Shown here one piece after another: positions 4,124-55,549 of a stretch of DNA of 64,000 nt. Below the pieces are notes generated by a model that was not told where the DNA came from, made no database searches, and saw only the letters and a program-made list of their open reading frames with translations. Made by a program: the position numbers and the translations under genes. Numbering within the stretch: the first letter of the stretch is position 1; every line of letters begins with the position of its first letter. The stretch comes from Klebsormidium nitens (Eukaryota; Plantae; Klebsormidiophyceae): NCBI GenBank assembly GCA_000708835.1, contig DF237265.1, positions 1 through 64,000 on the forward strand. Direction: 5' to 3'.

Positions 4124-7100
4124 TCAACTGGAGAAGAGAAATGCGAGGTCCTCTGCAGTCAGGCGCCCAAGAGCCTCTGCGGACCCCCCAACGGTTCTAT
4201 AAAACAAGGAATCAGAAGGATTAATTATGGCTAGCAGCAAACGTTCGGGTGAATGCATCACAAGCGGAACAGTACTCAATCAAAACTCGACAAAAGTTTC
4301 AGGATCACCTGAGCAGCCCTGCACAATCAGGTGCGTCCCTGAAGAACACACTTATACTCAAGTACGGAACTCCAAGCGTCCTCGAGCTTGGGACCCCTCC
4401 GTGACGAGCTTAGACTCTCGGACCCAGACTATGAAGCATTCTCAAAGAAGATTTACCGGGCAGGCGAGGTTCGATGGGGCATTAAAGCCGAGTCGGCTGC
4501 CGGTTGCCCAGCGCTCTGATTGCGCTGGCCATTGCAAGATCCGCAACCCGTCCAGCGGCGGACCAACCAATCTCCTAGAGCACAGCCACGAAATGATTGA
4601 GCTTTTAGGCACTCACCCGTCGAACACTAGCTGCTTCTTCTCCTGCAGCTTCAGGATGCGTTCCTCAATAGTGTTCTCGATGACGAAGCGGGTGACCCTG
4701 AATACAGAAAGGAGAAACGGTATCTGGCAACAGTATCGACTGCAACGACAACAGGCAGGATGCTGAAGGCTGGAAAAGCACACGCCCTATGTAGGAAGGC
4801 GAGTTCTGAAACCTCCTGACTGCGAAACTAAGCGTCAATCAATCTGCCACAACAGAATCAGGTTCCAAGCTGCAAAGAAATGCAACGCGTTAACGTGTGG
4901 TATTCTACAAATACCATCTTGGCAACCAACTTCGTGCGATTCGTTCAAATAAACTTGGGTCAGGCAGCCAAGTTTGATTGAAGCTGCAGAGAATTAGCAG
5001 ATTCGACCTCCTATGTGCTTACTGGATGGGTTTGTATTGCCCAAGCCGGTGGATGCGATCCTGCGCCTGCTGCTCGACTGCGGGGTTCCACCTGGACGCA
5101 ACAAGTGACGCATGGCAGCCGTCAAAAAATGACACGTGGCTCATCAGGGGCATGGCTTTTTAGGGCGAAATGCCCTTGCTTCAGTTGCCTAGACTAGATT
5201 AGCACAGCCTAGAAACAGGGGCCTCTGCTATTCTTCGCGTCCAACGCGTCCATTGCCACACGGGGAAGGTCACCGAGCAAAAGGACGCTTTGAAGCGGGA
5301 CTCGACTCAGAGATGGAGAAACAGAGCAGTGACTGCGTTTTTCAGATGTTTTGTGTCCGCTCAGATGCATATTGTGCCGTTCTAAGGGTCCACAATGCGT
5401 CCTAAGTAAAACTCCCTCAAAGAAAGTGCCAAGGGTACAATTCAGGCTTTACGGTCCAAGCAGGTCGAGACTGTCGCCACAAGAGGCGCTGCAAACTCAA
5501 CCCGCAAAAGCCAAAACCAGAGTGGTTTCAGGAGGGCGAATCTAGTCGAAAGTTGCTTTATAGGGGCAGTCGTTGATCGGCAGAAATCTTGCTTCTGCAA
5601 CTGGCGAGGAGTACGACTCGTGTCAGAACACATTTTGGCAACCCTTGCATCAAGGAAGCAGTGTCCGCGAGAGTGACTGACCAAGGGTCCATGAGGAAGA
5701 CGCGGGAGGCGACCGTCAAGTTAAGGGCCACGCCGCCAGCCTTGAGGCTCATCAGAAACACCTGCAGAGAAACGGTGGGCCAGTCTAAATCAGGCGTAGC
5801 AAAACGGAACCCACAAAATGACACGGTCTGAAGGCCGGAAACAATGACATGCCAGCAGATATTTCCCAGTCAGTCGTGATTGGTGAGAAGCCAGACCGTC
5901 GAGCAAGCGCTGAAGGTAAAGAAACAATAGATAACAGCGGGAGGCGGGATCGTCACAGGAAGGAAAGATGAAGGGAACCAATTCTAACTTCAATCGCGGG
6001 AGTCAGAATAGCAGAAAATTCGAAAACACACCACGTCGGCATATCGTCCAGTATACCCCTGGCCTTAAGCTCCCCCGTGCCTTAAATCTTTGATTTGCAT
6101 TCAGAATCTATCTGAGGGTGCAAACCCACCTTGGCGTCCGGGTCGTTATTGTGGTTCTGGTACATGCGGTCGCGCTATTCAATCCAGGAATCAGAATCTC
6201 AAGGTTACTGAGCCCGAACTCCGATTCCCAAAACTACGTAAGCCTCGTGCAGAGATTTCCCAGATGTTTCAAAAATAACTTCGACAGTGCAGACCCACCT
6301 TGACGTCGGGGTCGTTGGTGAAGTCCTGGATCATGCGGTCGCGATGCTCCATGGACATGGAGCCGTCCAGCTTCACGCACTTGATGCCCGCCTTCTCCAG
6401 CCGGAAGTGGCACAGGTCCAGCATGCTCGTGAACTGGCTGAACACCAGGCCCTTCGCGGACGGGTCGTCCTCCGTCATCAGCGCTATCTCCTCGCGCTGC
6501 GGAGATGGAAGAAAGGATTCGGTCGAGATTGGTTCAAGGGTCGGCTTGGCTTTCCAAATGACGCGTTGAGCCGGAACGGAACGAAAGGGTTCAAACGGAG
6601 TCGGGAACCTGCCTCGGTTGTAGAAGTACGGAAGCCGAATCCTCTTGATGGAGCGAGAACCAATATTGAATTTGGGTGATCAACCCAAGAAGTTTGACGG
6701 CAGCTCGGGAGGTTGGTGACGATCGGGTACGTTCATCGGCTATAAAATGACGCCAGTCCAGTTGTCGAACGTCGATTAAGTACGCCCGTTGACAAACCAC
6801 TTGAGATTGGCTTCGCCGTTTTCCACATCCACCCAAAACCCGTAGGTTCCTCACCAAAGACTTCGGATGTGACCATGTTGTAAAGGCGATGTCAAAGCGA
6901 CTCCGGAAAAGAATAAAAGAAAATGGAAGTGCGGGGCCCTGCACTCACGAGCGCCTCGATCTTGGTGCTCGTCTGGAACCCCCCCAGGTTGATCCGGTTC
7001 AGGATGCTCGTGCGCTTCTTGCTCATGCTCGCAGCGGTCGCTACCGCTGCTGCTTGCGCCGATCCTGCGGCGCAGAAAGCAGACAGCACTGAGTAATGAC

Positions 7101-44079: not shown

Positions 44080-46256
44080 GGCGGCGCACGCCTTTTCCTA
44101 ATTAATTCCGAAGCGGCATACCCCAGTTTTCAGTCAAACTGATTGAGTACTGGGGATATGTGATGCCTGATGCACATATTTTCCTGAAGCCTATCTGATG
44201 ATGTGGACCCTTCCAGCGCCTGTGTAGCGTGCAGTAGCTGCGACAGAACTGCTAACCCTTTCTTTGATTGTTCCAGAAAGCACGCTGTATTTGTAGAGAA
44301 CTGGTTAGATAAATCAAACTTGTGTCACACAACATTCTTCAAATTAAGTGCTTGGATCAAGGGTTGCAAAAGGGGAGATGGGGAGGGGAGGGATCCGGGA
44401 AGGGGCGGGGAGTTGAGCATGAGGAGAGTGGAGGGCACCTGTGGCGAGGGGTAAGGATGGCCCAATTGTTATGCATGTCTTCCATCTGTGGATCTCAAAG
44501 TGATGGCTTCATGCACATTCTCTCTGTTGATTGAGCATTCTGAGTCCAGCACCGCCATTGATTATTGAAACCCGGATCAACTTGAGCTTAACTTGCTAAG
44601 GAATCCTTTCAAGTGTACACCCTGATTCTGATGTCGGATCAAATGATAACGGAGCATGACCTGGGATGTCGGTGGTTTGACAGAAGCTTTGGCTCAAGCG
44701 AGTGCATGCCACCTGATGCTCAGGGTGGATGACAATCTGTGGCGCCACCCCCACAATCTGCTACACCTTTACTCAATTAGACGGTCTTTTGGTCAAGTGC
44801 CAATGAAGTCGAGTCAGGGCCTGGCATAGTAGCGCAGGGAACGATGGAGACCCAGCCGTGCCCGCTGGCCCCTGATTCAGTCTGGTAGCACATTACAGTG
44901 GTTTTATGTTCGATTTCTTTTGACGGTGTATATGCTTGAAGCATTCTCTCAGTAATATTGTGAACACGGCGCGCTAGCTCTTGCTTACATGAGTTTGTCA
45001 TGCTAGAGCTCCGCTGATCCTTGCCATGCCGCCACCGGGTGGGCCATGCATCCGCTAATGTGGTGGAAGTGCCTGGAATGGCATCATTAATTGCAGCTGA
45101 TACAGATCAATAATCGCGCACTCTATTGGAATATACGATGATACTTTGGTCGGATGCATGCGAGCTCGATCACTCTATATTAGATATTCACAGCTCCTGG
45201 GTGGAGCCTGCTGCATGCAATGATGGCCGACTCCTCACGATCAGCTTATAGTATTACTACATAGCTTCTTGCAGTCTCCTACCGGCTAGTAGATATACTA
45301 TAGTAATCTGGTATATATATATTTAGAGCACGGCTATATATATATCTGCAGTGGCGGCCGCCATGGCATGGTCACATGTCCGACTTCCGAATATGATCAT
45401 TATCAGTATATCGCAGAATGCGCTGCATGACTGAGCATGACTGACACTGAGCTATAGCTCTTCGAGCTCGCCGCACCAGCCCCGGATCTCCAGCTTATTT
45501 ACTTGAATAAGCTCGATCCGGTGTTCCGACTGATTGCAATCGTTGCAACTTATGCATCAAACTGAGCTTAATTCAGTGTGCCACTGAATGGAGCTCACAT
45601 CATTAGCACATGTGCTGACAATCTTGCATTTGCAAGTAGCCAATCCCGCATGGTCTCAAGCTGTCAAAACCTACCTGCTTAAGCTCACTGCATTTCCGTC
45701 CTGAATTTTCAACAGTATTGTCGAAATTTGCACCCGGTGTTCCCATCAGTCAATATGCACATGTATGGCCGGGCGCGGCCAGCTAGGGCTGCCCGACCTA
45801 TTTGGAAAAGACAGAACAGAATGATATCGGTGTAAGATGCAGTACAGTGATTAGTGTACGAGATAATGTACATGATTCGAACAAAGCTGACATGCAATAG
45901 CAATTAACCTGAAGTCCGCTTCTGAACGCCAGATTATGCTGAGTCTCCCGTAGTGCTTGCATGTCACATCTATGCTACATTCGGAGAGGCTAAGTCGGTG
46001 GTCGCACTGGGGGCAGTTCTGTAGGAACCACAGACGAACCCGTTAAGGCGCATCTGATGAAGCCTCCAACCATTGTCTACGTCTGCACGGGTCTTGAGAA
46101 TCAAGCAGAAGCTTCTTTCGAGGTGCAAGCTACCATGCGAGCACACTCTGCAAGCAACGTATGTATAAGATGTCCATCAAGACGAGATTGAACAACAGAA
46201 TTGAGTGCACCAATGTTGAACGGAGAGGGAGGGAGTGCCACAGCCGCTAGCCTGGG

Positions 46257-49200
46257 TCAGCGTCTTTGCTCACCATCTTTTTGTCGAGGGTTGAAGCCTG
46301 GCATCCCTTCCCGGCTAGCTAACCTCCGCGGCGGTCGACTCGTCACCTCCGGAGGAGAAGACACCTCCCCCACCTCCGCTTGAGGCCCTGCAGAAGAGAG
46401 TATCGGGTGATGAGGACAATGATGCGACAGTGGGCGAAGTTTGCTGACAAAATGATTACATTCAAGACCACTCGAAACTCTTCCGTCCTTCAGAGGATCA
46501 AATATTTCGGAGAACGCTTTAGGAAGTCAGGCAATATAACAGCGAAGCATTCGGAACCCCGTCATTTTGTTACCGGGCAGATCAGTGCGGCTTTTCTTAA
46601 CATGAAAAGCTTCTGACGTCGGATGGACCAGGCCCATTCAGATGAGTTCGGTCCGACTGGAAGAAAAAGATCCCAGAACGATCGCCTCTTGCAGAAATGA
46701 ACAACGTAGAACCGGGGTCTTTCAGCTTATTAGGCATCATACCCTAGTATGAATTAGGACTGCCGAGCTGTTTGCCCACGAGCACGCAACCACACAATCA
46801 CACCGAGCGGCTACTCGGTACTACCAAAGAGACTGAATACTAAGGCCGTCAGCCTGGATGCACGTGGAAACGAGGACCCCCTAGCTTGTCCCTCACCTTG
46901 GCCGTTGGCCTGGCTCTCCACCCGCGTGAGGTCCTCCTCGCTGGCCGTCGTGAAGAAGGGCCGAATGTACTTCTTGTCCACCGTCTCCAAAAAGCTGCGC
47001 CCACGAGAGAAGCAGCGACAGGGAAAGGAGTGAGATCGGCTGTGTGAACTACCGTCGAAAAGCGATGGGAAAAGCCAAAGCGGGTCGTCGCAGCAGGTCT
47101 ATGACTCAAGCGTCTGGATTCCATAGTGTTTGACGTGCGGAACATCAAACGACAAGGTAAAAGAGGACAAGGATTTTGGAAAGGTGCACGTGTCGAACTT
47201 CTGAAGATAAGTGGTTGAAACCGTGGGTGTTAGAGAACACAAGTTTGACTAACAGAACGAAGTGGAGCTTCGAAGTGAAGATCGACAGATCATCGTCTTG
47301 TCCACAAAAAAAGGAATTGTAGCATGGTCTGCTTTTGAAGCACCGAAGGCGCTATGATTGTGGCGAAAGCTCAGAAAGAGCGCGACTCACGTGCCGTTTG
47401 CCTCCGGCATGTACTGCTTGGCCGCTCGCTGGAAGTTTTTGAGGCGCATCTGAAGGGAGCCCCGGCTTGTGGGGCTCGAGGGGGGCGTGTAGTCCGACTC
47501 GCCGTTCCCCTGCAACAGGAAACGCGCGTCAAGTTAGCGGTACTGTGATATCGTCCAGGAGAAGGGCAAAAGGCGTAGTCCGGCCCGACACGAGTAGGCC
47601 AGCCGAGTGGCAGCTAATTGACCAACTAGAGAGGAAAAGCCAACAAAAACTTCAACGATTGGGTCTCAAAAGTACTGCACTGCAACCAACAGCACACATC
47701 TCAAGAAGAACCAAAAGCGGGGGATAAACTCAACGTGGTATTTCAGCCTGCACAATCTATTGCTTAGAAGTCTGGCAGCAAGCTAGACCAGCGGCGACCA
47801 CGAATCAAGATACCGGGCGGGCTTCTAAGCTGGGAGCGACAAAATTTAGAACAAACGATGAAAAACGGCAAACACCGCTCACCGATCGCATCAGCCCCGC
47901 CTCCTCCCCCGCTCCATCTAGAGCCTGCAAAGGATATTTCCACCACTAAGCACTCAAAAAACAGTTGTTGCCCGCCCAATCACACTAGCCGGTCTCGAGG
48001 TACACTGTGCTAGACGGGACTGGCGCCCACTGTAACCTTATTTCGGTTGAATTGATGAACAGCGAACTGAGGGGGGATACGCAATTTTATGCGTGCGCGA
48101 CGGCTCACCTCCCCTGCCAGTGGCTGGAAGTCGTCCCCCAGCAAGTCGAGCCGCCTGAGGACCTCCGCTGTGGAACCCCCGACCCCCAAGACCTGCGGAA
48201 AAGAAAGACACGGAGTGACCTTAGAGGCACGACGAGTCTTGTCACAGCCCGACCCACCCGTTGGCAGCCCATTTGCAAGCAGAGTGCTGCGAAGAATTGA
48301 GCACACGGGTCGACCCAATTAAATGTGGTCAACAATTCTGCGTGTACCAGGGCCCTTTTTTTCGAGATCCATGACTCAAAGAGGCAGGAAAAGCACTTTA
48401 GCCGATTGTGTTGAGCGCGATTCCGTGGGTCAAAGAGAGGCACGTAAGGGTCAAGGATGCACTATCCTTGCCTTCTATGATCTGACACATTCTAGACAAA
48501 GTCCTGCCTTCATAAGCTCGAAAGTGCTTCATAAGCCCATAATCGCTCCTCTTCTGAGGTGGTGCGGGCTCTTACCGTGAGCACCACGATGGCCGTGGTC
48601 GTTGTGAACATGACCTTCCCGTGGCCCGTTGGTAGGTCCTCAATCGACTGCAGCGCAAGTGCGAACGCCATGGCGCCCCGGAGACCTGCACGGAATTGAC
48701 ACGAAAGCAGCTGACCAGTGGGCCTCGGCCGGGGAATAGATCTGGGTACACTTGGCCATATTGCTTTTCTTGTTTAGTTTCGTGCGCTGAATCGGCCCAG
48801 GAACGATGCATAGCGGACGTCTCAACGAGAGAAGAAAAAATTGCACAAAGGAACCATGAGCGTATGATTTAAATGGGGAGCGCAAACCAATGAACGACTC
48901 AGCGATGGCCGTTCTGAAGAGAGGATTCGACCCCTAACGAGCCGGAGCCTGTGTAAAGAAACATCGATCATATGCTGTTCGTGCCCTGATGGCTTACCGC
49001 TGAACCAGAGCGCTTTTTGATGGGCCATAGGGATGTTCTTGCTGCGGGGCCGGATAGTGTTGATGATGTATGACAGCGGGAACACGTTGGCGGCCCTGCG
49101 CAGGACCGGAACGCTTGCTTGAGCGGAAGGGCATCTTGTTTATAACGATGCACATCGAGAAGCGTGGAAGCTTGCAAGCTGTGTGCTGCACTGCTGTCGT

Positions 49201-52200
49201 CCTCCAAGCTGAAACGTTGTTGCGAAAAGTTCGAGAGCGGCTTCCTTGAGGAATCCGGCAGATACTCGACTTCAATCAGTAGAACTCAGAAGTACCATGC
49301 CCTCTGCAACACTACGGATAGAAATAGCATCATTCTTGATGTCTCCATTGCTGATTGAAAACGTGAGCCCTTTGTCAGCGGAATAAGATGCACATCACTC
49401 ACAGACATGCCGGCCTCTCACCAGGGAGGTTCAACAAAACCGATTCATTGCCTCTCTTGTGCAGCTAACTGAAAGAAGTGGAGGTACGTACCTGGCTGCC
49501 AGGATAGCAATGATGGCAAAGAAGGTGAAGCTGACGTGTGTCCAGCTCTGCTCCGTGTTGAAGATGGCCACGCCCATGTAGATGAAGCTGGATACAGGGA
49601 GGCGCAAAAAGCTCAGCCGAAACTTGCAGCCGATATGATATGAGAGAAGAGACTGTCAGAACTCAGGTTAATCTGAGAATTTGAAGACACTGGCATATGC
49701 GGGTATGGAAGAGCTTCCCAGAAGTCTTCAAGTCGAACCTCATAGAAGGAAGTTCCTTCTTCCGTACGAAGATACGCATTCATAACGCACACACGCTGAC
49801 AGACGTACAATTTCTATCATAGAGCGGAATCTCTAGAGTACGCAAGGAAAAAGGAAAGCTGTTGCACTTTTAGCAGGGGCGGGACTCACACAAAGGTCTC
49901 GGCGAGGGTGGCAATCAGGCGGAAGAACTGTGTGACGTTCTCCTGGGCCTTGTCAGAAAGATTGGGAAGAGCGTAGTGCTTCATCAGCTGCAACAAAAGG
50001 AGATTGACGTCAGCACGGCCGCTACAGGAAAGCCACCCCGGCGAGTCAACGAACGTTTCTTTCGATAGGACAACGTTCGTCCCTCGCATCAGATGTGAAG
50101 TATCTTCTAGACCCGCTACTACGCTCGAATGCACGCTCATAGGCATATTGGGACAGCTTCTTCATCAACCACTGCGACTCTAGGTGCTACACGCAGAGAG
50201 CACAGGACACCAGTGGGTGGACCAGATGCAGACCCAATCAATCAGTCGCCATGCACGGGTCTCGAAACAGCTGACAACGGGGCGCCGAATCTGACTGATT
50301 GATCGTACGCACCACTCCGTTGAAGAGGATCGCGACGATCCCGGACAAGCTGAGGCCGTCGGCCATCATGTAGGCGCAGTACGGGAACAGGATCACCAGG
50401 CACGACTCCAAGTTGTGCAGGCTGCGACAATGGGGAGGGCCAGTCAAACTTTAGTCAGACTTCTTATGGCAGCAGTTCGCAACGCCCTATTGAAAACGGT
50501 CTCTTGGTTGTGCCAGTAGCTAGAGTGCGCCCTTACAGTGCCGTTTCATCGATTGCCACGAAACCCTTCTCCGTAGGATAGCAACTACGATCACCTTCAA
50601 ACGGCCAGACAATGAGGACGTGCTGTCAAGAGTAAATGGGGTTAATCTTGAGCGAAGATGCACATGCTTGAGAAAATAAGCGGCTGTGGCAGGGGGCACC
50701 TACTTGTTCACCGCCAACCCAGCGTACTTGAACAGCAGCGCGCAGGCCAACGCAACTACGGTACCTGTACAACCAGACGGAACGGGACTTCTTAGCAGTT
50801 AATGGAGGAAACGGCTTGGAATCATACCCAAAGAGATGCCAGCGGAAATCACAAGGAAGCTGCCGGAGAGGAGACAACTAAATCTTGGTTGGATCGATCA
50901 CGGGATGTTTGAGCCAAGACGCAGCACGATCGAGCTTGCCTAGAAACTTTGATACTGATTCGACGGACAGAGCCACCGTCTTCCAAGTAATACTTCCAAG
51001 AGATGAAGGGGAGGTGGTTTTAATGACGACTTTCTGCCAAGACGGATTTCAGAACTTTCCAACCGAGGACGATGTCTAGCCTGCTTCAAATGCGCCGTTA
51101 GTAAACCCCTGCCCGCTTCCTTCGACTCACCAATCGCTAGCGAGCCCATGAGGATGGTCAGGAAGACCACGGCGGGGTCGTAAATGTTGCGATGCTGCTC
51201 GGGGTTTGCTACGACCGAAACAAGCGTCCTACAAGGATACGGAGACGGGCGGGTTGGACATCGACGCGTCTTGGGGGTTAGTGCCGCCACTCACCTATGG
51301 CTAGGGAGCCCACCAGAATAATGAGGAAGAAAACAATGGGGTCCCTCAGATTAAGCTGGTCAAAGCCGGTGGCCTGAAACGAGAGCAACGTCCTGCACAC
51401 ACGCCCAGACGACGGCTGCTCCGGTGAACGCACCGCTGAGCGAAGGGACGGTGACTTGCAAGCGTTGAGTACTTGATAGTTCACCAGAACACCTGAATGT
51501 TTTCAAAACGTTAGGACAGACGTAGACGTATGACTATTTGAGCATCGTATGAAGAGCCTCGAATGGTGTTGCTGAACTTCGACCAAGATTCAGTGTTCCG
51601 GAATTCTTAGCTGCGACCAGAGAAATCGTTCGGCTCCAGTTCGTCTGCTGAATTCGATTCGTTAGTGCTTGACAGTGGGGCCAACTTGCTTGGAGCAGTC
51701 CAACAAGGGACCAGGGCCACTCTCCTGGCATGTTTGAAACACGTGTAAAGTTCGAAAAGAAGAGCGCTCACCTGTACAGAACGATGGCCACAGCATCGTT
51801 CAAGATGGACTCTCCAAACACAAGGGCATAAAGGTTGACGTCCCCTCCCAGCTCCTGCAAAAACGATGGATATCTTCAAGGCTGGAATGCCACCTGCAAT
51901 CTTTGAAAACGGACTGCGCAGCGCGACAGGCGCTGCCAAATGTTATGCAGGCTTTCGAAACTTCCTGAGCCTCAAGATGAAGAGAAGGACTGATCGAAAA
52001 GTTTTCAAGATGAGTTGTTCTGGAATGAGTCATTTGAATCCACATTCACTGGACGTGAAAGCCACCTGGCCGACTTAAAAGACTCCAGTCAATTGCAATG
52101 CCGTGTGTGCCACGATCACATCCCGCAGATTTCTGGAAGGAATTGTGCAGAATCCCCCCGAGGCGACGTCTGGGTTGAACAACTTTCCATGATCTGTGAA

Positions 52201-54322
52201 GGGTGCTACATGAGTGCTGCATATATGACTAATTTGGGAAACGACACACACAAAATCGTGACTTCGATCTGCTGCGGAGCAGTTCCGGGCGCCCGGCTTC
52301 TCACCTGGAAAATTGCCAGGACCGTCACTGGGTCTGTCGCCGAAATGAGCGCCCCAAAGATAAGGCACTCCACAAAGGGCAGCTGATAACTCAGCCAAAG
52401 GAAGCCCACCACATACCTGCACAATAGTTGTGAGGCTTAAGTGGGAGATTTTCCAAGGACAAAATCTGCCCTTTTAAAAAAATCTGATCAAATAGGAATG
52501 GCATCACTCGAACCTCAGCTCCTTCCGAGTTCACCTTATTGACCAATGATTGGACCCGCAGGCGTGGCGAACAGGTGGAGACCTTAAAGACATGGTTTGC
52601 GGGGATTACAACTAGCAAGTACTGTCTTGCGTAGCAATGACGGCAGCCGAAAAGTGACCGTTTGAAGAGTAGATGGCCAGAATGGGGCTCAATGGGTAGC
52701 TTGGGGACTCACATGATCACGCCGGTCACAATGGCTGCTATGAAGGTCCCCACGAATGCGAAGAGGGCGATGGCCCCAAAGTTTTCAAAGAAGGATTTCT
52801 GCAGAGAACGGGAATTTTCAGGTCTGCATTCTGCGGGGTGCTCTCAAAATCGGCGATCAGTGAACCTGAATGAGCAAGCATAAATGCATCGACAATTCTG
52901 GTGATAGGGGACCCCCCTATTGGCCGCAAATTTCCCTGAGACGAATCCTTGCCCACAGGCAGAGAAAAGATGGCCACTTTGGAGTTGCAATTCACATACA
53001 ATTTCCAGTCATATTGATCGATTCCTGCATCCAACATGTGAGTCTGACGGCTCATTGTCTTGGCAAGCTCACCACTTGAAGACTGAACCCGGACTCAAAT
53101 ATGATGGGAGGAAGCAGGAAGAGCAGAAAGAACTCGTTGCTGAAGTTGAGCCACCGCCTGCAGATCACAGAATTCGCCACGCAATGAAGCTCATTTCTAC
53201 AACCTCATTACAAACCTCTCTGATCGAGTCAGGAGTAGCTCTCCTTGCTGGAATTGGTGAGCAGTACTGGGTCCAGACTAAATGCCTGGCTGTTGCATAT
53301 CATTGAACAATAAGAAAATCATCGAATCTTCGGAGGCATGAAGAAGAGCTGCACATCGTTGAAGTGTCACATCACCTGAAAGCTTCCTCTGTGTTGAAAA
53401 TCCTTGACAGAAGGCCAACCACCACCCCTGCACTTGCATAGTGCCAAGAGTGAGCCCATAATGCATCAGCCCGTACAGAGGTCACTGCAAGATCTGATCT
53501 CTAACGATGTGAAGTTTCACGCCCCTCACCAAGCAGCAGCTCCGTTCTGTAAGCACTGCCCCTGTAAACTGCCCTTCAACAACATGATTAGCCACTTGAG
53601 CATATTCTGTAGCCTTGTTGTTAGTGTGTGCAAACGGGACTGAATCAGAAGGGGGGGGATGTGAGAAAACCCTAATATGCTCGTTGTGCTCTGACGCCCC
53701 TGGCCAGCCTCATATATGCATGCATGTTAAACCATCTGATGCAGATTTTCACAGCGGGGTGGATAGACTGAGGTTTATGAAAACCGACTTGGGCAGACGG
53801 AAGAAGACGGGCATCCCAAAGCAAGAGCTCTAAGGATAGTATTTGTCCCATTCAGTGGTTTGTAGGATGGACGAAGTTGAACGAAATCAATGGTGGAGTT
53901 TTGGATCTTTAGCCGGCATTTGCTTGGTGCTCCAAATTGCTACAGGTGTGTTCTTAGCCATGCATTACACCCCTCATGTAGACCTCGCATTTTTAAGCGT
54001 TGAGCATATTATGCGTGATGTCACTGGAGGAGTGTGACAATGTAATTGCTACCAGGAAAGCTCATGTTTAGATTGTGCCTCATAGGATGAACACATACTC
54101 ACCCATCAAGAGCGCTGATCCTGCTTCATGCATCCAGTATATCTTTCTCCTCCGCAAAATGTGGCCACATACAAACGCTGATCCTAAGAGAACTAACTGC
54201 AGGAGGATTGACAAACTTGCAAACATTTCCGGGTTTGCCGACTTTGCCACCAGATCTTGATGCGTCTGATCTATTGGGGACAGAGGGCTGGGTACAGGAG
54301 TAGGAGAGTTATTGACCTCCAT
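46257..54322 (-). CDS. NHX6: Endosomal (NHX5/6-class) Na+,K+/H+ antiporter, CPA1 family
   Basis: Exon 54103-54322 (MEVNN...[12 protein letters not shown]), then exons encoding [62 protein letters not shown], alternative exons 51295-51392 / 51131-51228, [54 protein letters not shown], and a terminal exon with stop at 46257. Confidence 0.93.
51131..51392 (-). other. Pair of paralogous 98-nt mutually exclusive exons in NHX
   Basis: Exon A 51295-51392 and exon B 51131-51228 both have AG/GTGAGT, are phase 2 in and phase 1 out, are open, and are homologous (xTLxS...DPxVxFLxILxGSLAIG). Confidence 0.88.
53891..54031 (+). pseudogene. cob: NUMT: mitochondrial cytochrome b fragment inside NHX intron 1
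   Basis: Translates [47 protein letters not shown], which is the helix A region of cytochrome b. The flanks are unrelated. Confidence 0.92.
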
Positions 54323-55549
54323 CTTAGAAAAAGGAAATGTAATGCCTTCCATTGATTTTGTTCAGTCCCTCTACAAGTTGTGGCAGAACCCTTTCAATTG
54401 ATCAAGTAACAAACTGAACGTCTATCAACAGCAGCTTCCCCTTCTCTGGTCCTCAAGCGCGCACCCACATCGAGCTGCAACCATACCTCGAGCAATTTCT
54501 ATTCGTAGTATCTTATCTTCATGGAGGGGAGTATTATCCTACAATTTGAACGAGGGCTGGTTTTTTCTAGTGCTCAAGGAGTACCAAACAGCGCCGCCAT
54601 AAGAAAGTGCCACTTGCGCACCACGCTTCACAGATATTGATCGGAGCAGCAGAGGAACTCCCTCACAATCTGCCTCAAAGAGTCTCCCCTGTCAAGTTAC
54701 AGAACCTGGGGGACCCGGGGTACACACATCGACCTCAGATATAATATTGGTCCCCCCCCCTGCCTAAATGCCTGGTCCAGGGCCTTCCGGCACTAAAATC
54801 AGTACCCCCTGCTCGGATGAGATGCGTTCCTGCAGCAGAGGCTTCATGCAGTATCCGGGGTCCGACCAAGGTTTTCGTCCCAGACTATGGTGCCAGATGT
54901 CACAAACAGAGAGATTCTAGCAAACCCTGGCCCAGTCCCTTGCCCGCCAGAGGAAATTTGAATTTGACAGAGTATCATTTTGGTCTTTGTGGAATATGGA
55001 CACCCTGCTTGTGTTCCTCTGAAGGTTGGGTTTGCAGCATTGCTGGTTCCGAAGTCGGTTAGCAAAAATTGCCCATATCAGGTTATATCCATATAAGCCT
55101 CCTTGGACTTCCTTTTAAATAGCTGCAAAAGAACTGCCAACATACTGTGAATGGATAAAGTGTGGCCCATATTAGCTTTGGCATACACGACTTTGAGGGC
55201 CCTTATAAGGAAGGGTCCAAGTGCTTATGCCGCGTGAGCCCTGCCCGCGAGCTGCGCAAAATGTCTCCCTCTCAAATCTTCGCTCATCGCTGGCGCTTTC
55301 GCCCTTTCGGTGCTTGCGAAAGCGCCCTTCCGAGTCCTGATCAGAGGCTAGGTGATCATGGCTGCCGAAGTTGTCCTTGCAGCTGCTTGCAGCAACATGA
55401 TGTCTTTCAGGATTGATTGATAGGGAAGGGGCAAGGGGCACCTCGTGTGTTGAAAGAAACTTTCACCAGATTGAGTTCATTGAAGTAATACAGTCGCTAG
55501 ACATCGTTAGAAGCAGTCCACGAGACAAAGTGACAGCCAATTGGAAGCC
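54323..55549. promoter_or_regulatory. Divergent intergenic/promoter region NHX-MOR1
   Basis: Head-to-head starts 1.2 kb apart. Position only; no motif was validated. The same layout holds for beta-helix/PBF1 (36875-37925) and S18/SET (24680-26264). Confidence 0.5.

What the first reader, a model, noticed from the sequence alone, without database searches (positions are those of the whole stretch)
51131..51392. Mutually exclusive duplicated exons in an endosomal NHX antiporter, with a steric-exclusion branch point
Seen in sequence: two 98-nt homologous exons encode [32 protein letters not shown] (A) and [32 protein letters not shown] (B). They have identical phases, intact AG/GTGAGT signals and no stops despite heavy nucleotide divergence, so both appear to be under selection. 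Including both or neither breaks the frame. The 66-nt intron between them reads GTGAGTGGCGGCACTAAC..., placing a consensus branch point (CACTAAC, 51277-51283) only 17 nt from exon A's donor. Established: this donor-to-branch-point geometry is the steric mechanism of vertebrate alpha-tropomyosin exons 2/3, and homologous mutually exclusive exons are considered rare in the green lineage. Inference: one gene makes two antiporter isoforms that differ in the loop and helix just after the ion-binding ND motif, possibly altering pH sensing, selectivity or localisation.
Basis: partly seen in the sequence, partly recalled or inferred. Interest (0 to 1): 0.88.

Follow-up and report, generated by a model that had tools for sequence, protein, structure and literature searches.

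The report
Either-or twin exons in algal antiporter
A Klebsormidium nitens gene for an endosome-type sodium/proton exchanger has two adjacent look-alike 98-base exons, and each mRNA keeps exactly one, giving two transporter versions of which only one is publicly annotated; the proposed branch-point mechanism is not supported.

Summary
On the minus strand, exon A (51392-51295) and exon B (51228-51131) are both 98 nt, in the same phase, and 17/32 aa identical. They are separated by a 66-nt intron.

RNA contigs from four public runs show all four diagnostic junctions (upstream exon to A or B; A or B to downstream exon). No A-to-B joint and no skip-both joint was listed. One run carries only A, two carry only B, and one carries both at about equal depth.

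The gene is the NHX5/6-type antiporter of Klebsormidium nitens. The public protein GAQ86855.1 matches isoform B; exon A is unannotated.

A diverged relative (metagenome contig L001, synonymous sites near saturation) keeps both exons under purifying selection. Marchantia and Closterium orthologues have a single copy.

The swapped piece is the last two turns of TM6 (starting 9 residues after the ND motif), the TM6-TM7 loop, and the first half of the TM7 linker helix.

The steric branch-point claim is not supported as stated. CACTAAC is not conserved in the relative. A conserved candidate branch site lies 41-45 nt from exon A's donor. The intron stays short (66 vs 74 nt), so a general short-intron hindrance remains possible.

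Frame incompatibility is shown: A+B gives a stop six codons into exon B.

The scan's earlier notes list many other such exon pairs in this genome.

The parts
45993..54352 (-). Coding span of the NHX5/6-type Na+(K+)/H+ antiporter gene: about 20 exon positions, with A and B sharing one. The public protein GAQ86855.1 starts at the second in-frame ATG (54322).
   Evidence: Junctions from RNA contigs. All introns are GT..AG. Spliced translation. The C-terminal exons were placed with P0173. P0173 is 100% identical to isoform B over 464 aa.
51772..51854 (-). Constitutive exon E6. It encodes the end of TM5 through TM6, with the [13 protein letters not shown] segment (ND motif). Its donor is AG|GTGAGC.
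51295..51392 (-). Exon A (98 nt, enters in phase 2). It is an unannotated alternative exon and the dominant form in run X1.
   Evidence: Junctions 51772->51392 and 51295->50764 appear in X1 and X2. It is conserved in L001 (6200-6297), with 9 synonymous and 4 nonsynonymous differences.
51229..51294 (-). The 66-nt intron between A and B. It is the only intron of the gene under about 180 nt. No contig shows it spliced out.
   Evidence: The orthologous intron is 74 nt in L001.
51277..51283 (-).
   Evidence: Present here. Not conserved in L001, where the aligned bases are CCCTGCC. Not mapped experimentally.
51253..51258 (-). tccaAc, an alternative candidate branch site for exon B. It lies 25-26 nt upstream of the acceptor, 40-41 nt from exon A's donor, and directly before the pyrimidine-rich tract.
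   Evidence: It aligns with ccttAc in L001, whose intron interior has adenines only at positions 43, 45 and 51. This is inference, not a mapped branch.
51131..51228 (-). Exon B (98 nt, same phase). This is the exon in the public annotation and the dominant form in runs X9 and X11.
   Evidence: Junctions 51772->51228 and 51131->50764 appear in X2, X9 and X11. It is identical to P0173 residues 214-245. It is conserved in L001 (6372-6469), with 18.5 synonymous and 4.5 nonsynonymous differences.
51209..51211 (-). The TAG stop codon that comes into frame if A and B are joined.
   Evidence: the translation ends ...LAIGRLFRS*
50704..50764 (-). Constitutive exon E8 (second half of the TM7 linker helix). 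It is the shared acceptor for A and B.
51403..51428 (-). Conserved intronic block just upstream of exon A's acceptor. It includes ttcAc (A at 51425, 33 nt upstream), a candidate branch site or regulatory element for exon A.
   Evidence: It is 17/20 identical to L001 inside an otherwise unalignable intron.
51103..51113 (-). GGCAGGGGTTT, the only conserved block in the intron downstream of exon B (18-28 nt after its donor).
   Evidence: Its function was not tested. RNA folds around it are not better than shuffled sequence.

Best explanation
A tandem duplication of a 164-nt unit (one 98-nt exon plus short intron flanks) created two homologous exons in the NHX5/6-type endosomal cation/proton exchanger gene of Klebsormidium nitens. 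It arose within the Klebsormidium lineage, before the split from the L001 species. Each mature mRNA carries exactly one of the two exons. This gives two full-length exchangers that differ at 15 of 32 residues, in three places: the last 7 residues of TM6 (starting 9 residues after the ion-binding Asp of the ND motif), the 8-residue TM6-TM7 loop (11 of the first 16 positions differ), and the first 17 residues of the TM7 linker helix that joins the transport core to the dimer domain (4 of 16 differ). Both versions are kept by purifying selection. Which one dominates differs sharply between RNA samples, so the choice looks switch-like.

Exclusivity at the product level is guaranteed by the reading frame: 98 is not a multiple of 3, A+B gives a stop six codons into exon B, and skipping both also shifts the frame. 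Such transcripts are expected to be removed by nonsense-mediated decay.

The very short A-B intron (66 nt, against roughly 180-675 nt for every other intron of the gene) probably also makes A-to-B splicing inefficient, because any branch site inside it lies at most 49 nt from exon A's donor. This step is inferred, not shown. It does not depend on the CACTAAC motif.

By topology, the swapped loop faces the lumen, so the isoforms most plausibly differ in lumen-side gating or pH response, or in the core-to-dimer-domain linkage. That is also inference.
For: Shown:
- All four bridging junctions are present, with no A-B or skip-both joint, in contigs of four RNA runs. A only in X1 (depth about 220). 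B only in X9 and X11. Both in X2 (87.5 vs 99.4).
- Frame consequences of joining or skipping.
- Homology of A and B.
- Organism and annotation: P0173 = GAQ86855.1 of K. nitens is 100% identical to isoform B, and its 90% cluster has one member. No database protein of 28-87 aa shares words with exon A.
- Conservation: the L001 relative keeps both exons in tandem with intact splice sites. The excess of synonymous change has binomial P 0.0013 (A) and 2e-7 (B). pN/pS is 0.16 and 0.09, against 0.03 for the constitutive exons, whose pooled pS is 0.64.
- Marchantia and Closterium orthologous loci have one copy.
- Structure: the AF2 model has TM6 at 191-220 with N204/D205, the loop at 221-228 and TM7 at 229-259, with pLDDT 90-97 in this stretch. 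Foldseek to NHE9 6z3z gives TMt 0.87 and rmsd 3.3. In NHE9, Asp244 sits in TM6 and TM7 is the linker helix (PMC7737618).
- Intron lengths. The A-B intron is 66 vs 74 nt, while the neighbouring introns change from 379 to 232 and from 366 to 526 nt.
Against: - The RNA evidence is assembled contigs, not reads. Assemblers drop minor variants, so 'A only' or 'B only' means dominant, not exclusive, and rare A+B or intron-retaining transcripts cannot be excluded.
- Sample conditions are coded, so regulation cannot be told from strain differences.
- No protein-level evidence exists for isoform A.
- The minimum spliceable intron length in this alga is unknown. Introns of 60-75 nt are spliced routinely in many plants, so the short-intron contribution may be nil.
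- The retained shortness of the intron is weak evidence: a short intron is also a small target for insertions.
- The functional difference between isoforms is untested.
Confidence: 0.85

Rival explanations
1. Exon B's acceptor uses the CACTAAC branch point 17 nt from exon A's donor, so U1 on A's donor and U2 on the branch site cannot assemble together, as in alpha-tropomyosin exons 2/3.
For: The motif exists at 51283-51277 and is the only CTRAY match in the 66-nt intron. No A-B joint was seen in four runs. A steric threshold of about 50 nt between donor and branch point is documented in vertebrates (PMC5740500; PMC7969005).
Against: The motif is not conserved in L001, which keeps both exons (CCCTGCC at the aligned place). 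L001's intron interior has adenines only 43-51 nt from the donor. This gene's other introns rarely carry CTRAY near the acceptor, so branch sites here are degenerate. The stretch between the motif and the acceptor is not a clean pyrimidine tract. A similar ACTAAC also follows exon B's donor in a 366-nt intron, where it cannot play this role, and it too is not conserved.
Confidence: 0.12
2. There is no steric block at all. Exclusivity comes only from splice-site competition plus removal of frame-shifted A+B and skip-both transcripts by nonsense-mediated decay.
For: Frame incompatibility is shown. [quoted passage not shown] The conserved candidate branch site sits 41-45 nt from the donor, a distance that short-intron organisms can splice (inference).
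Against: No A-B joint contig appears in any of four runs, although intron-derived contigs of depth 3-8 are listed beside isoform contigs of depth about 90-220. The A-B intron is about 3-10 times shorter than all other introns of the gene in both species.
Confidence: 0.4
3. The sample-to-sample difference in A versus B reflects strain genotype or an assembly artefact, not regulated switching.
For: The runs come from different studies, and one carries another species label (organism B). Contigs drop minor paths of equal length, which would exaggerate a switch.
Against: All laid contigs are at least 99% identical to the window. Runs X1, X2 and X11 share one species label yet show A, A+B and B respectively. 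Both exons are conserved in a distant relative, which argues that both are used.
Confidence: 0.15
4. One of the two exons is a decaying duplicate spliced in as noise, so only one isoform is functional.
For: Only isoform B is in the public annotation. Both exons evolve about 3 times faster at nonsynonymous sites than the constitutive exons.
Against: Each exon is the sole or equal form in at least one run at high depth. Both have intact frames and splice sites, and pN/pS of 0.16 or less, across a divergence where synonymous sites are near saturation.
Confidence: 0.03

Closest known systems
Homologous mutually exclusive exons from tandem exon duplication, as defined by Pillmann/Hatje/Kollmar (human and Drosophila MXE atlases, Kassiopeia). 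Green-lineage precedent: Volvox carteri cyn23 exons 4/5.
   Same: The two exons are adjacent, of equal length, in the same phase, and homologous. Bridging junctions exist from each exon to both neighbours. No joining junction is seen, and joining would shift the frame. The swapped segment sits inside secondary-structure elements (PMC5740500). Volvox cyn23 has two 106-nt exons differing at 13 residues, verified by RT-PCR (PMC4378016).
   Different: This case is in a streptophyte alga and in a CPA1 exchanger. No paper in the searched library reports MXEs in Klebsormidium or in NHX genes. For Arabidopsis, such reports are described as rare or absent (PMC3923563).
Steric-hindrance MXEs: alpha-tropomyosin exons 2/3 and OGDH exons 4a/4b (distant branch points close to the upstream donor).
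   Same: The intervening intron is short, any branch site in it lies less than 50 nt from the upstream donor, and no joined product is seen.
   Different: In those genes the branch points were mapped, lie far from the 3' splice site behind a long pyrimidine tract, and are conserved (PMC7969005). Here nothing is mapped, the proposed motif is not conserved, and the conserved candidate site sits at an ordinary 25-31 nt from the acceptor.
Plant NHX5/NHX6 and animal NHE6/7/9 (endosomal/TGN CPA1 exchangers, Pfam PF00999).
   Same: The best named relatives are 'sodium/hydrogen exchanger 6' of land plants at 50-65% identity. The ND motif and a 13-TM fold are present. The closest solved structures are NHE6 and NHE9.
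   Different: The Marchantia and Closterium orthologues have one copy of this exon. No isoform pair swapping the TM6 end, loop and TM7 was found for other members of the family in these searches.

Membership tests
Mutually exclusive exons (tandem-duplication type) | Neighbouring internal exons of similar length, in the same reading phase, with sequence homology | tested here: met
   98 vs 98 nt, both entering in phase 2, 17/32 aa identical, E 2e-9
Mutually exclusive exons (tandem-duplication type) | Splice junctions from each exon to the upstream and downstream constitutive exons that bridge the other copy | tested here: met
   All four junctions appear in RNA contigs. A junctions in X1 and X2; B junctions in X2, X9 and X11.
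Mutually exclusive exons (tandem-duplication type) | No junction joining the two exons, or joining causes a frame shift | tested here: met
   No 51295->51228 joint is listed in four runs (contigs only, so rare joints are not excluded). Joining gives a stop at 51211-51209.
Steric-hindrance MXE (alpha-tropomyosin / OGDH type) | A mapped branch point of the downstream exon lying below the steric limit (about 50 nt) from the upstream exon's donor | tested here: inconclusive
   The intron is only 66 nt, so any branch site lies 49 nt or less from the donor. No branch was mapped, and the limit for this alga is unknown.
Steric-hindrance MXE (alpha-tropomyosin / OGDH type) | Distant branch point conserved across species, followed by a long pyrimidine tract to the 3' splice site | tested here: not met
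   CACTAAC is not conserved in L001. The conserved candidate site is at an ordinary 25-31 nt from the acceptor. The stretch after CACTAAC contains many purines.
Steric-hindrance MXE (alpha-tropomyosin / OGDH type) | Lengthening the intron or moving the branch point permits joint inclusion | not testable with these tools
   Needs a minigene experiment.
CPA1 Na+(K+)/H+ exchanger, NHX5/6 - NHE6/7/9 clade | Na_H_Exchanger domain (PF00999) with the electroneutral ND motif in TM6 and the TDP motif at the TM5 break | tested here: met
   PF00999 is precomputed for P0173. N204-D205 and ATDP are in the spliced translation.
CPA1 Na+(K+)/H+ exchanger, NHX5/6 - NHE6/7/9 clade | 13-TM NhaA-type fold with a core domain, a dimer domain and a TM7 linker | tested here: met
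   The AF2 model has pTM 0.74 and 13 TM helices. Foldseek to NHE9 gives TMt 0.87, rmsd 3.3, 36-38% identity.
CPA1 Na+(K+)/H+ exchanger, NHX5/6 - NHE6/7/9 clade | Closest relatives are NHX5/6 rather than vacuolar NHX1-4 or SOS1 | tested here: met
   The best named hits are NHX6/NHX5 of land plants. Among solved structures, NHE6/NHE9 rank above NHE1/NHE3 and well above SOS1. No formal tree was built.
CPA1 Na+(K+)/H+ exchanger, NHX5/6 - NHE6/7/9 clade | Endosomal/TGN localisation and K+(Na+)/H+ exchange activity | not testable with these tools
   Inferred from orthology only.

The most novel reading that the evidence does not exclude
The NHX pair is one instance of a genome-wide class in Klebsormidium: tandem twin exons separated by near-minimal introns, which the spliceosome cannot remove, used as environment-driven binary switches. 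In this gene, the switch would retune the lumen-facing end of TM6, the loop and the TM7 linker of an endosomal exchanger. Exon B's loop carries a His/Glu/Arg cluster that exon A lacks. That would change the exchanger's pH set-point or elevator kinetics when the alga meets drying, salt or pH stress. Earlier notes of this scan, unchecked by me, list about a dozen further pairs in this genome. Their spans imply similarly short inter-exon introns, for example 78 nt in the DTC carrier.
Probability: 0.2. Interest if true: 0.85.

Novelty: new member of a known kind. Interest (0 to 1): 0.6.

Why it matters
Validated homologous mutually exclusive exons are scarce in the plant lineage, and none was found in the searched literature for Klebsormidium or for any NHX gene.

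This pair is RNA-supported, conserved and apparently switch-like. It sits in the mechanical heart of an elevator-type transporter: the helix end next to the ion site and the linker between the moving core and the fixed dimer domain. That offers a natural two-state experiment on how this segment sets pH response or transport rate in NHX5/6 and NHE6/9-type exchangers. NHE6 and NHE9 are human disease genes, as noted in the NHE9 structure paper, PMC7737618.

It also shows that the public K. nitens annotation misses a full protein isoform.

Together with the other pairs noted in this genome, it makes the origin and control of either-or splicing testable in an early-diverging relative of land plants.

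Tried and rejected
- **Metagenome scans.** Two scans for further relatives found nothing: the MXE peptide alignment and the exon-1 alignment.
- **Other contig look-ups.** Contigs for other exon-1-like fragments were too short or came from Closterium.
- **Retrieving isoform A from the protein database.** A query with the exon-A open frame found no candidate. An alignment of exon fragments onto a full-length homologue was too badly aligned by MAFFT to use as a profile. Land-plant queries rank the Klebsormidium protein too low to be listed. Isoform B was finally found through a region-limited search with a Marchantia paralogue.
- **Competing or looping RNA structures.** Inverted repeats around the exons are short and weak. 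Folds from exon A's donor to 45 nt past exon B's donor give z-scores of -0.8 and -1.1 in the two species, and the pairings are not conserved. Rejected for lack of evidence.
- **U2/U12 splice-site incompatibility.** All donors here are GTGAG-type. A GTATCCTT string near the 3' end of the A-B intron is not conserved. Rejected.
- **Dating the duplication from the 32-aa segment.** A and B share a DP...GSLAIG signature seen in none of about 250 homologues. However, exon A's helix half scores almost as well against prasinophyte-type sequences as against B (66 vs 69). Only the locus comparison is used.
- **Published intron-length figures for K. nitens.** None could be found.
- **Lower synonymous divergence of exon A.** pS is 0.36 against a pooled 0.64. 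This lies at the edge of the range of single constitutive exons (0.39-0.81), so it is not claimed as a signal.
Full report
**What is in the sequence**

The feature lies on the minus strand.
- Exon A is 51392-51295 and exon B is 51228-51131. Both are 98 nt.
- Both follow an AG, are followed by GTGAGT, and enter in the same codon phase.
They are 17/32 identical (BLASTP E 2e-9).
- A tblastn of either peptide over the whole 64-kb window finds only the other copy (E 2e-6).
- The repeat finder reports the pair as a direct repeat spaced 164 nt apart, which is one exon plus the 66-nt intron.
- Identity is 5/16 in the first half and 12/16 in the second half.

**Gene model and RNA evidence**

Logan contigs of four public RNA runs were laid on 48500-54400. 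They give 12 constitutive junctions, all GT..AG, plus four alternative ones:

| Junction | Runs |
|---|---|
| 51772->51392 (E6 to A) | X1, X2 |
| 51295->50764 (A to E8) | X1, X2 |
| 51772->51228 (E6 to B) | X2, X9, X11 |
| 51131->50764 (B to E8) | X2, X9, X11 |

- No joint removing the 66-nt intron and no E6-to-E8 joint was listed in any run.
- X1 carries only the A path (depth about 220).
- X9 and X11 carry only the B path (99 and 42), inside single contigs of 2.0-2.1 kb that span the transcript.
- X2 carries both paths (87.5 and 99.4).
- Intron-derived contigs of depth 3-8 are visible in the same runs, so low-abundance species are not wholly invisible.
- These are assemblies, however. A minor path of equal length can be dropped, so 'only' means 'dominant'.

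Translation of the spliced models:
- With A or with B the frame stays open.
- With A+B a TAG (51211-51209) comes into frame six codons into exon B.
- With neither exon the frame also shifts.

**Identity**

- The spliced protein is a CPA1 exchanger.
- A region-limited database search returned P0173, 'Na+/H+ antiporter [Klebsormidium nitens]' (GAQ86855.1, UniProt A0A1Y1I7C1, 597 aa, PF00999).
- P0173 is 100% identical to isoform B over 464 aa and 96.8% identical to isoform A.
- Its 90%-identity cluster has a single member.
- No database protein of 28-87 aa shares words with the exon-A open frame.
- So the window is K. nitens, and the public annotation holds isoform B only.
- The nearest named relatives are NHX6/NHX5 of land plants and Closterium proteins at 50-65% identity.
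- The nearest solved structures by sequence are human NHE6 and horse NHE9.

**Conservation**

A fragment 91% identical to exon 1 (P0001) lies on a 28.8-kb JGI metagenome contig, L001.
- All exons of the gene are found there in order.
- Pooled over 13 constitutive exons, pS is 0.64 and pN is 0.020. This is a clearly different species, with synonymous sites near saturation.
- Both twin exons are present in tandem (6200-6297 and 6372-6469), both 98 nt, with AG and GT(A/G)AGT signals.
- Exon A differs by 9 synonymous and 4 nonsynonymous changes. Exon B differs by 18.5 and 4.5.
- Against a neutral expectation of 74% nonsynonymous change, these give P = 0.0013 and 2e-7.
- pN/pS is 0.16 and 0.09, against 0.03 for the constitutive exons. 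Both copies are constrained, somewhat less tightly than the rest of the membrane domain.
- The NHX5/6 loci of Marchantia (L004) and Closterium (L005) hold one copy of the homologous exon and no second hit in the flanking introns. The duplication is therefore not shared with them.
- A and B share a DP...GSLAIG signature absent from about 250 homologues. The segment is too short to date the event by a tree.

**Where the swap sits in the protein**

An AlphaFold2 model of P0173, built with 41 homologues (pTM 0.74; pLDDT 90-97 over residues 201-250), shows 13 membrane helices.

| Element | Residues |
|---|---|
| TM6, holding N204-D205 | 191-220 |
| TM6-TM7 loop | 221-228 |
| TM7 | 229-259 |
| Twin exon | 214-245 |

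- The twin exon therefore encodes the last 7 residues of TM6, the whole loop, and the first 17 residues of TM7.
- The model superposes on NHE9 (6z3z) with TM-score 0.87 (normalised by target length) and rmsd 3.3 Å.
- In NHE9 the ion-binding Asp244 is in TM6, and TM7 is the linker helix between the six-helix transport core and the dimer domain (PMC7737618).
- A cytosolic C-terminus and the positive RRRK stretch after TM1 place the TM6-TM7 loop on the lumenal side. This is inference from the model and NHE9 topology.
- Most differences between A and B fall at this lumen-facing end. Exon B's loop has Glu, His and Arg where exon A has Phe, Gln and Leu.

**The proposed steric branch point**

- CACTAAC is present, with its branch-type A 17 nt from exon A's donor and 49 nt from exon B's acceptor.
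- Evidence against its role:
  - In L001 the aligned bases are CCCTGCC. The interior of L001's 74-nt intron has adenines only at positions 43, 45 and 51.
  - A yUnAy-like site is conserved at the ordinary place: tccaAc here (A at intron position 40/41) and ccttAc in L001. It sits directly before the pyrimidine-rich tract.
  - Only 3 of the gene's 13 other RNA-defined introns have any CTRAY motif within 60 nt of the acceptor, so branch sites in this alga are degenerate.
  - A second ACTAAC, 33 nt after exon B's donor, lies in a 366-nt intron where it cannot play this role. It is not conserved either.
- What remains is the shortness of the intron.
  - It is 66 nt, against 218-675 nt for the 13 RNA-defined introns and about 180-500 nt for the five C-terminal ones.
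  - It is 74 nt in L001, although the neighbouring introns changed from 379 to 232 nt and from 366 to 526 nt.
  - Any branch site in it is 49 nt or less from the donor, below the roughly 50-nt limit proposed for vertebrates (PMC5740500, PMC7969005).
- Whether that limit holds in this alga is unknown. I found no published intron-length distribution and could not lay reads on other genes.
- A short intron is also simply what a 164-nt tandem duplication leaves behind.
- So frame incompatibility is shown, short-intron hindrance is plausible but unproven, and the CACTAAC detail is not supported.

**Other mechanisms considered**

- Competing or looping RNA structures: only short, weak inverted repeats. 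Folds of the exon-B neighbourhood are no better than shuffles in either species, and the pairings differ between species.
- U2/U12 incompatibility: all donors are GTGAG-type.
- Two conserved intronic blocks may be regulatory. One lies 11-36 nt upstream of exon A's acceptor and includes a ttcAc candidate branch site. The other is GGCAGGGGTTT, 18-28 nt after exon B's donor. Neither was tested.

**Comparison with what is known**

- The pair meets every criterion used for the human MXE atlas (PMC5740500).
- A green-algal precedent exists in Volvox cyn23: two 106-nt exons, verified by RT-PCR (PMC4378016).
- For Arabidopsis, such reports were described as rare or absent (PMC3923563).
- The searched library holds no report of MXEs in Klebsormidium or in NHX genes.
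- Earlier notes of this scan, unchecked by me, list about a dozen other twin-exon pairs in the same genome, several said to be RNA-supported. The NHX pair therefore looks like one case of a wider habit of this genome.

**Verdict**

This is a real, conserved, RNA-supported mutually exclusive exon pair in the K. nitens NHX5/6-type exchanger. The second protein isoform is unannotated and usage looks switch-like. It is a new member of a known kind of splicing event. The specific steric branch-point mechanism is not supported.

Noticed in passing
window 54322-54352 (minus strand): There are two in-frame start codons. The public protein starts at the second ATG (54322, MEVNNSP...). An upstream ATG at 54352 would add 10 residues, and RNA contigs extend beyond it. 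In L001 the residues before the second Met differ, so the second Met is the conserved one.
   Followed up: partly
window 51097-51103 and 51277-51283 (minus strand): ACTAAC occurs shortly after the donors of both twin exons (33 and 17 nt downstream). This is possibly a leftover of the duplicated unit. Neither copy is conserved in L001.
   Followed up: yes
window 51233-51240 (minus strand): GTATCCTT, a match to the U12-type donor consensus, lies 5-12 nt before exon B's start. It is not conserved in L001 (GTCTGTCC) and has no plausible exon upstream of it, so it is probably chance.
   Followed up: partly
window 51295-51392 vs L001 6200-6297: Exon A has the lowest synonymous divergence of all exons of the gene (pS 0.36, against 0.64 pooled and 0.74 for exon B). 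This might reflect splicing-regulatory constraint in the exon, but it lies at the edge of the range of single exons.
   Followed up: partly
L005 15065-15106 (Closterium sp. NIES-68 NHX5/6 locus): A partial second copy of the exon upstream of the MXE-homologous exon (14 aa, 86% identical to [14 protein letters not shown]...) lies about 100 nt before the real one. It may be a pseudo-exon or another small tandem duplication.
   Followed up: no
window 53399-54131, 51366-51792, 50778-51085: Low-depth RNA contigs (depth 3-15) cover parts of introns 1, 6 and the intron after exon B in several runs. They are pre-mRNA or retained-intron species. One intronic G>A difference at 53926 appears in run X2 only.
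   Followed up: no
one search hit list (P0030, P0158-P0172): Streptophytes carry a second, NHE8-like clade of these exchangers (Marchantia 'SLC9 member 8', Selaginella, Closterium, Mesotaenium, Spirogloea). Its segment after the ND motif begins TLLSF like exon A. No tree was built.
   Followed up: no
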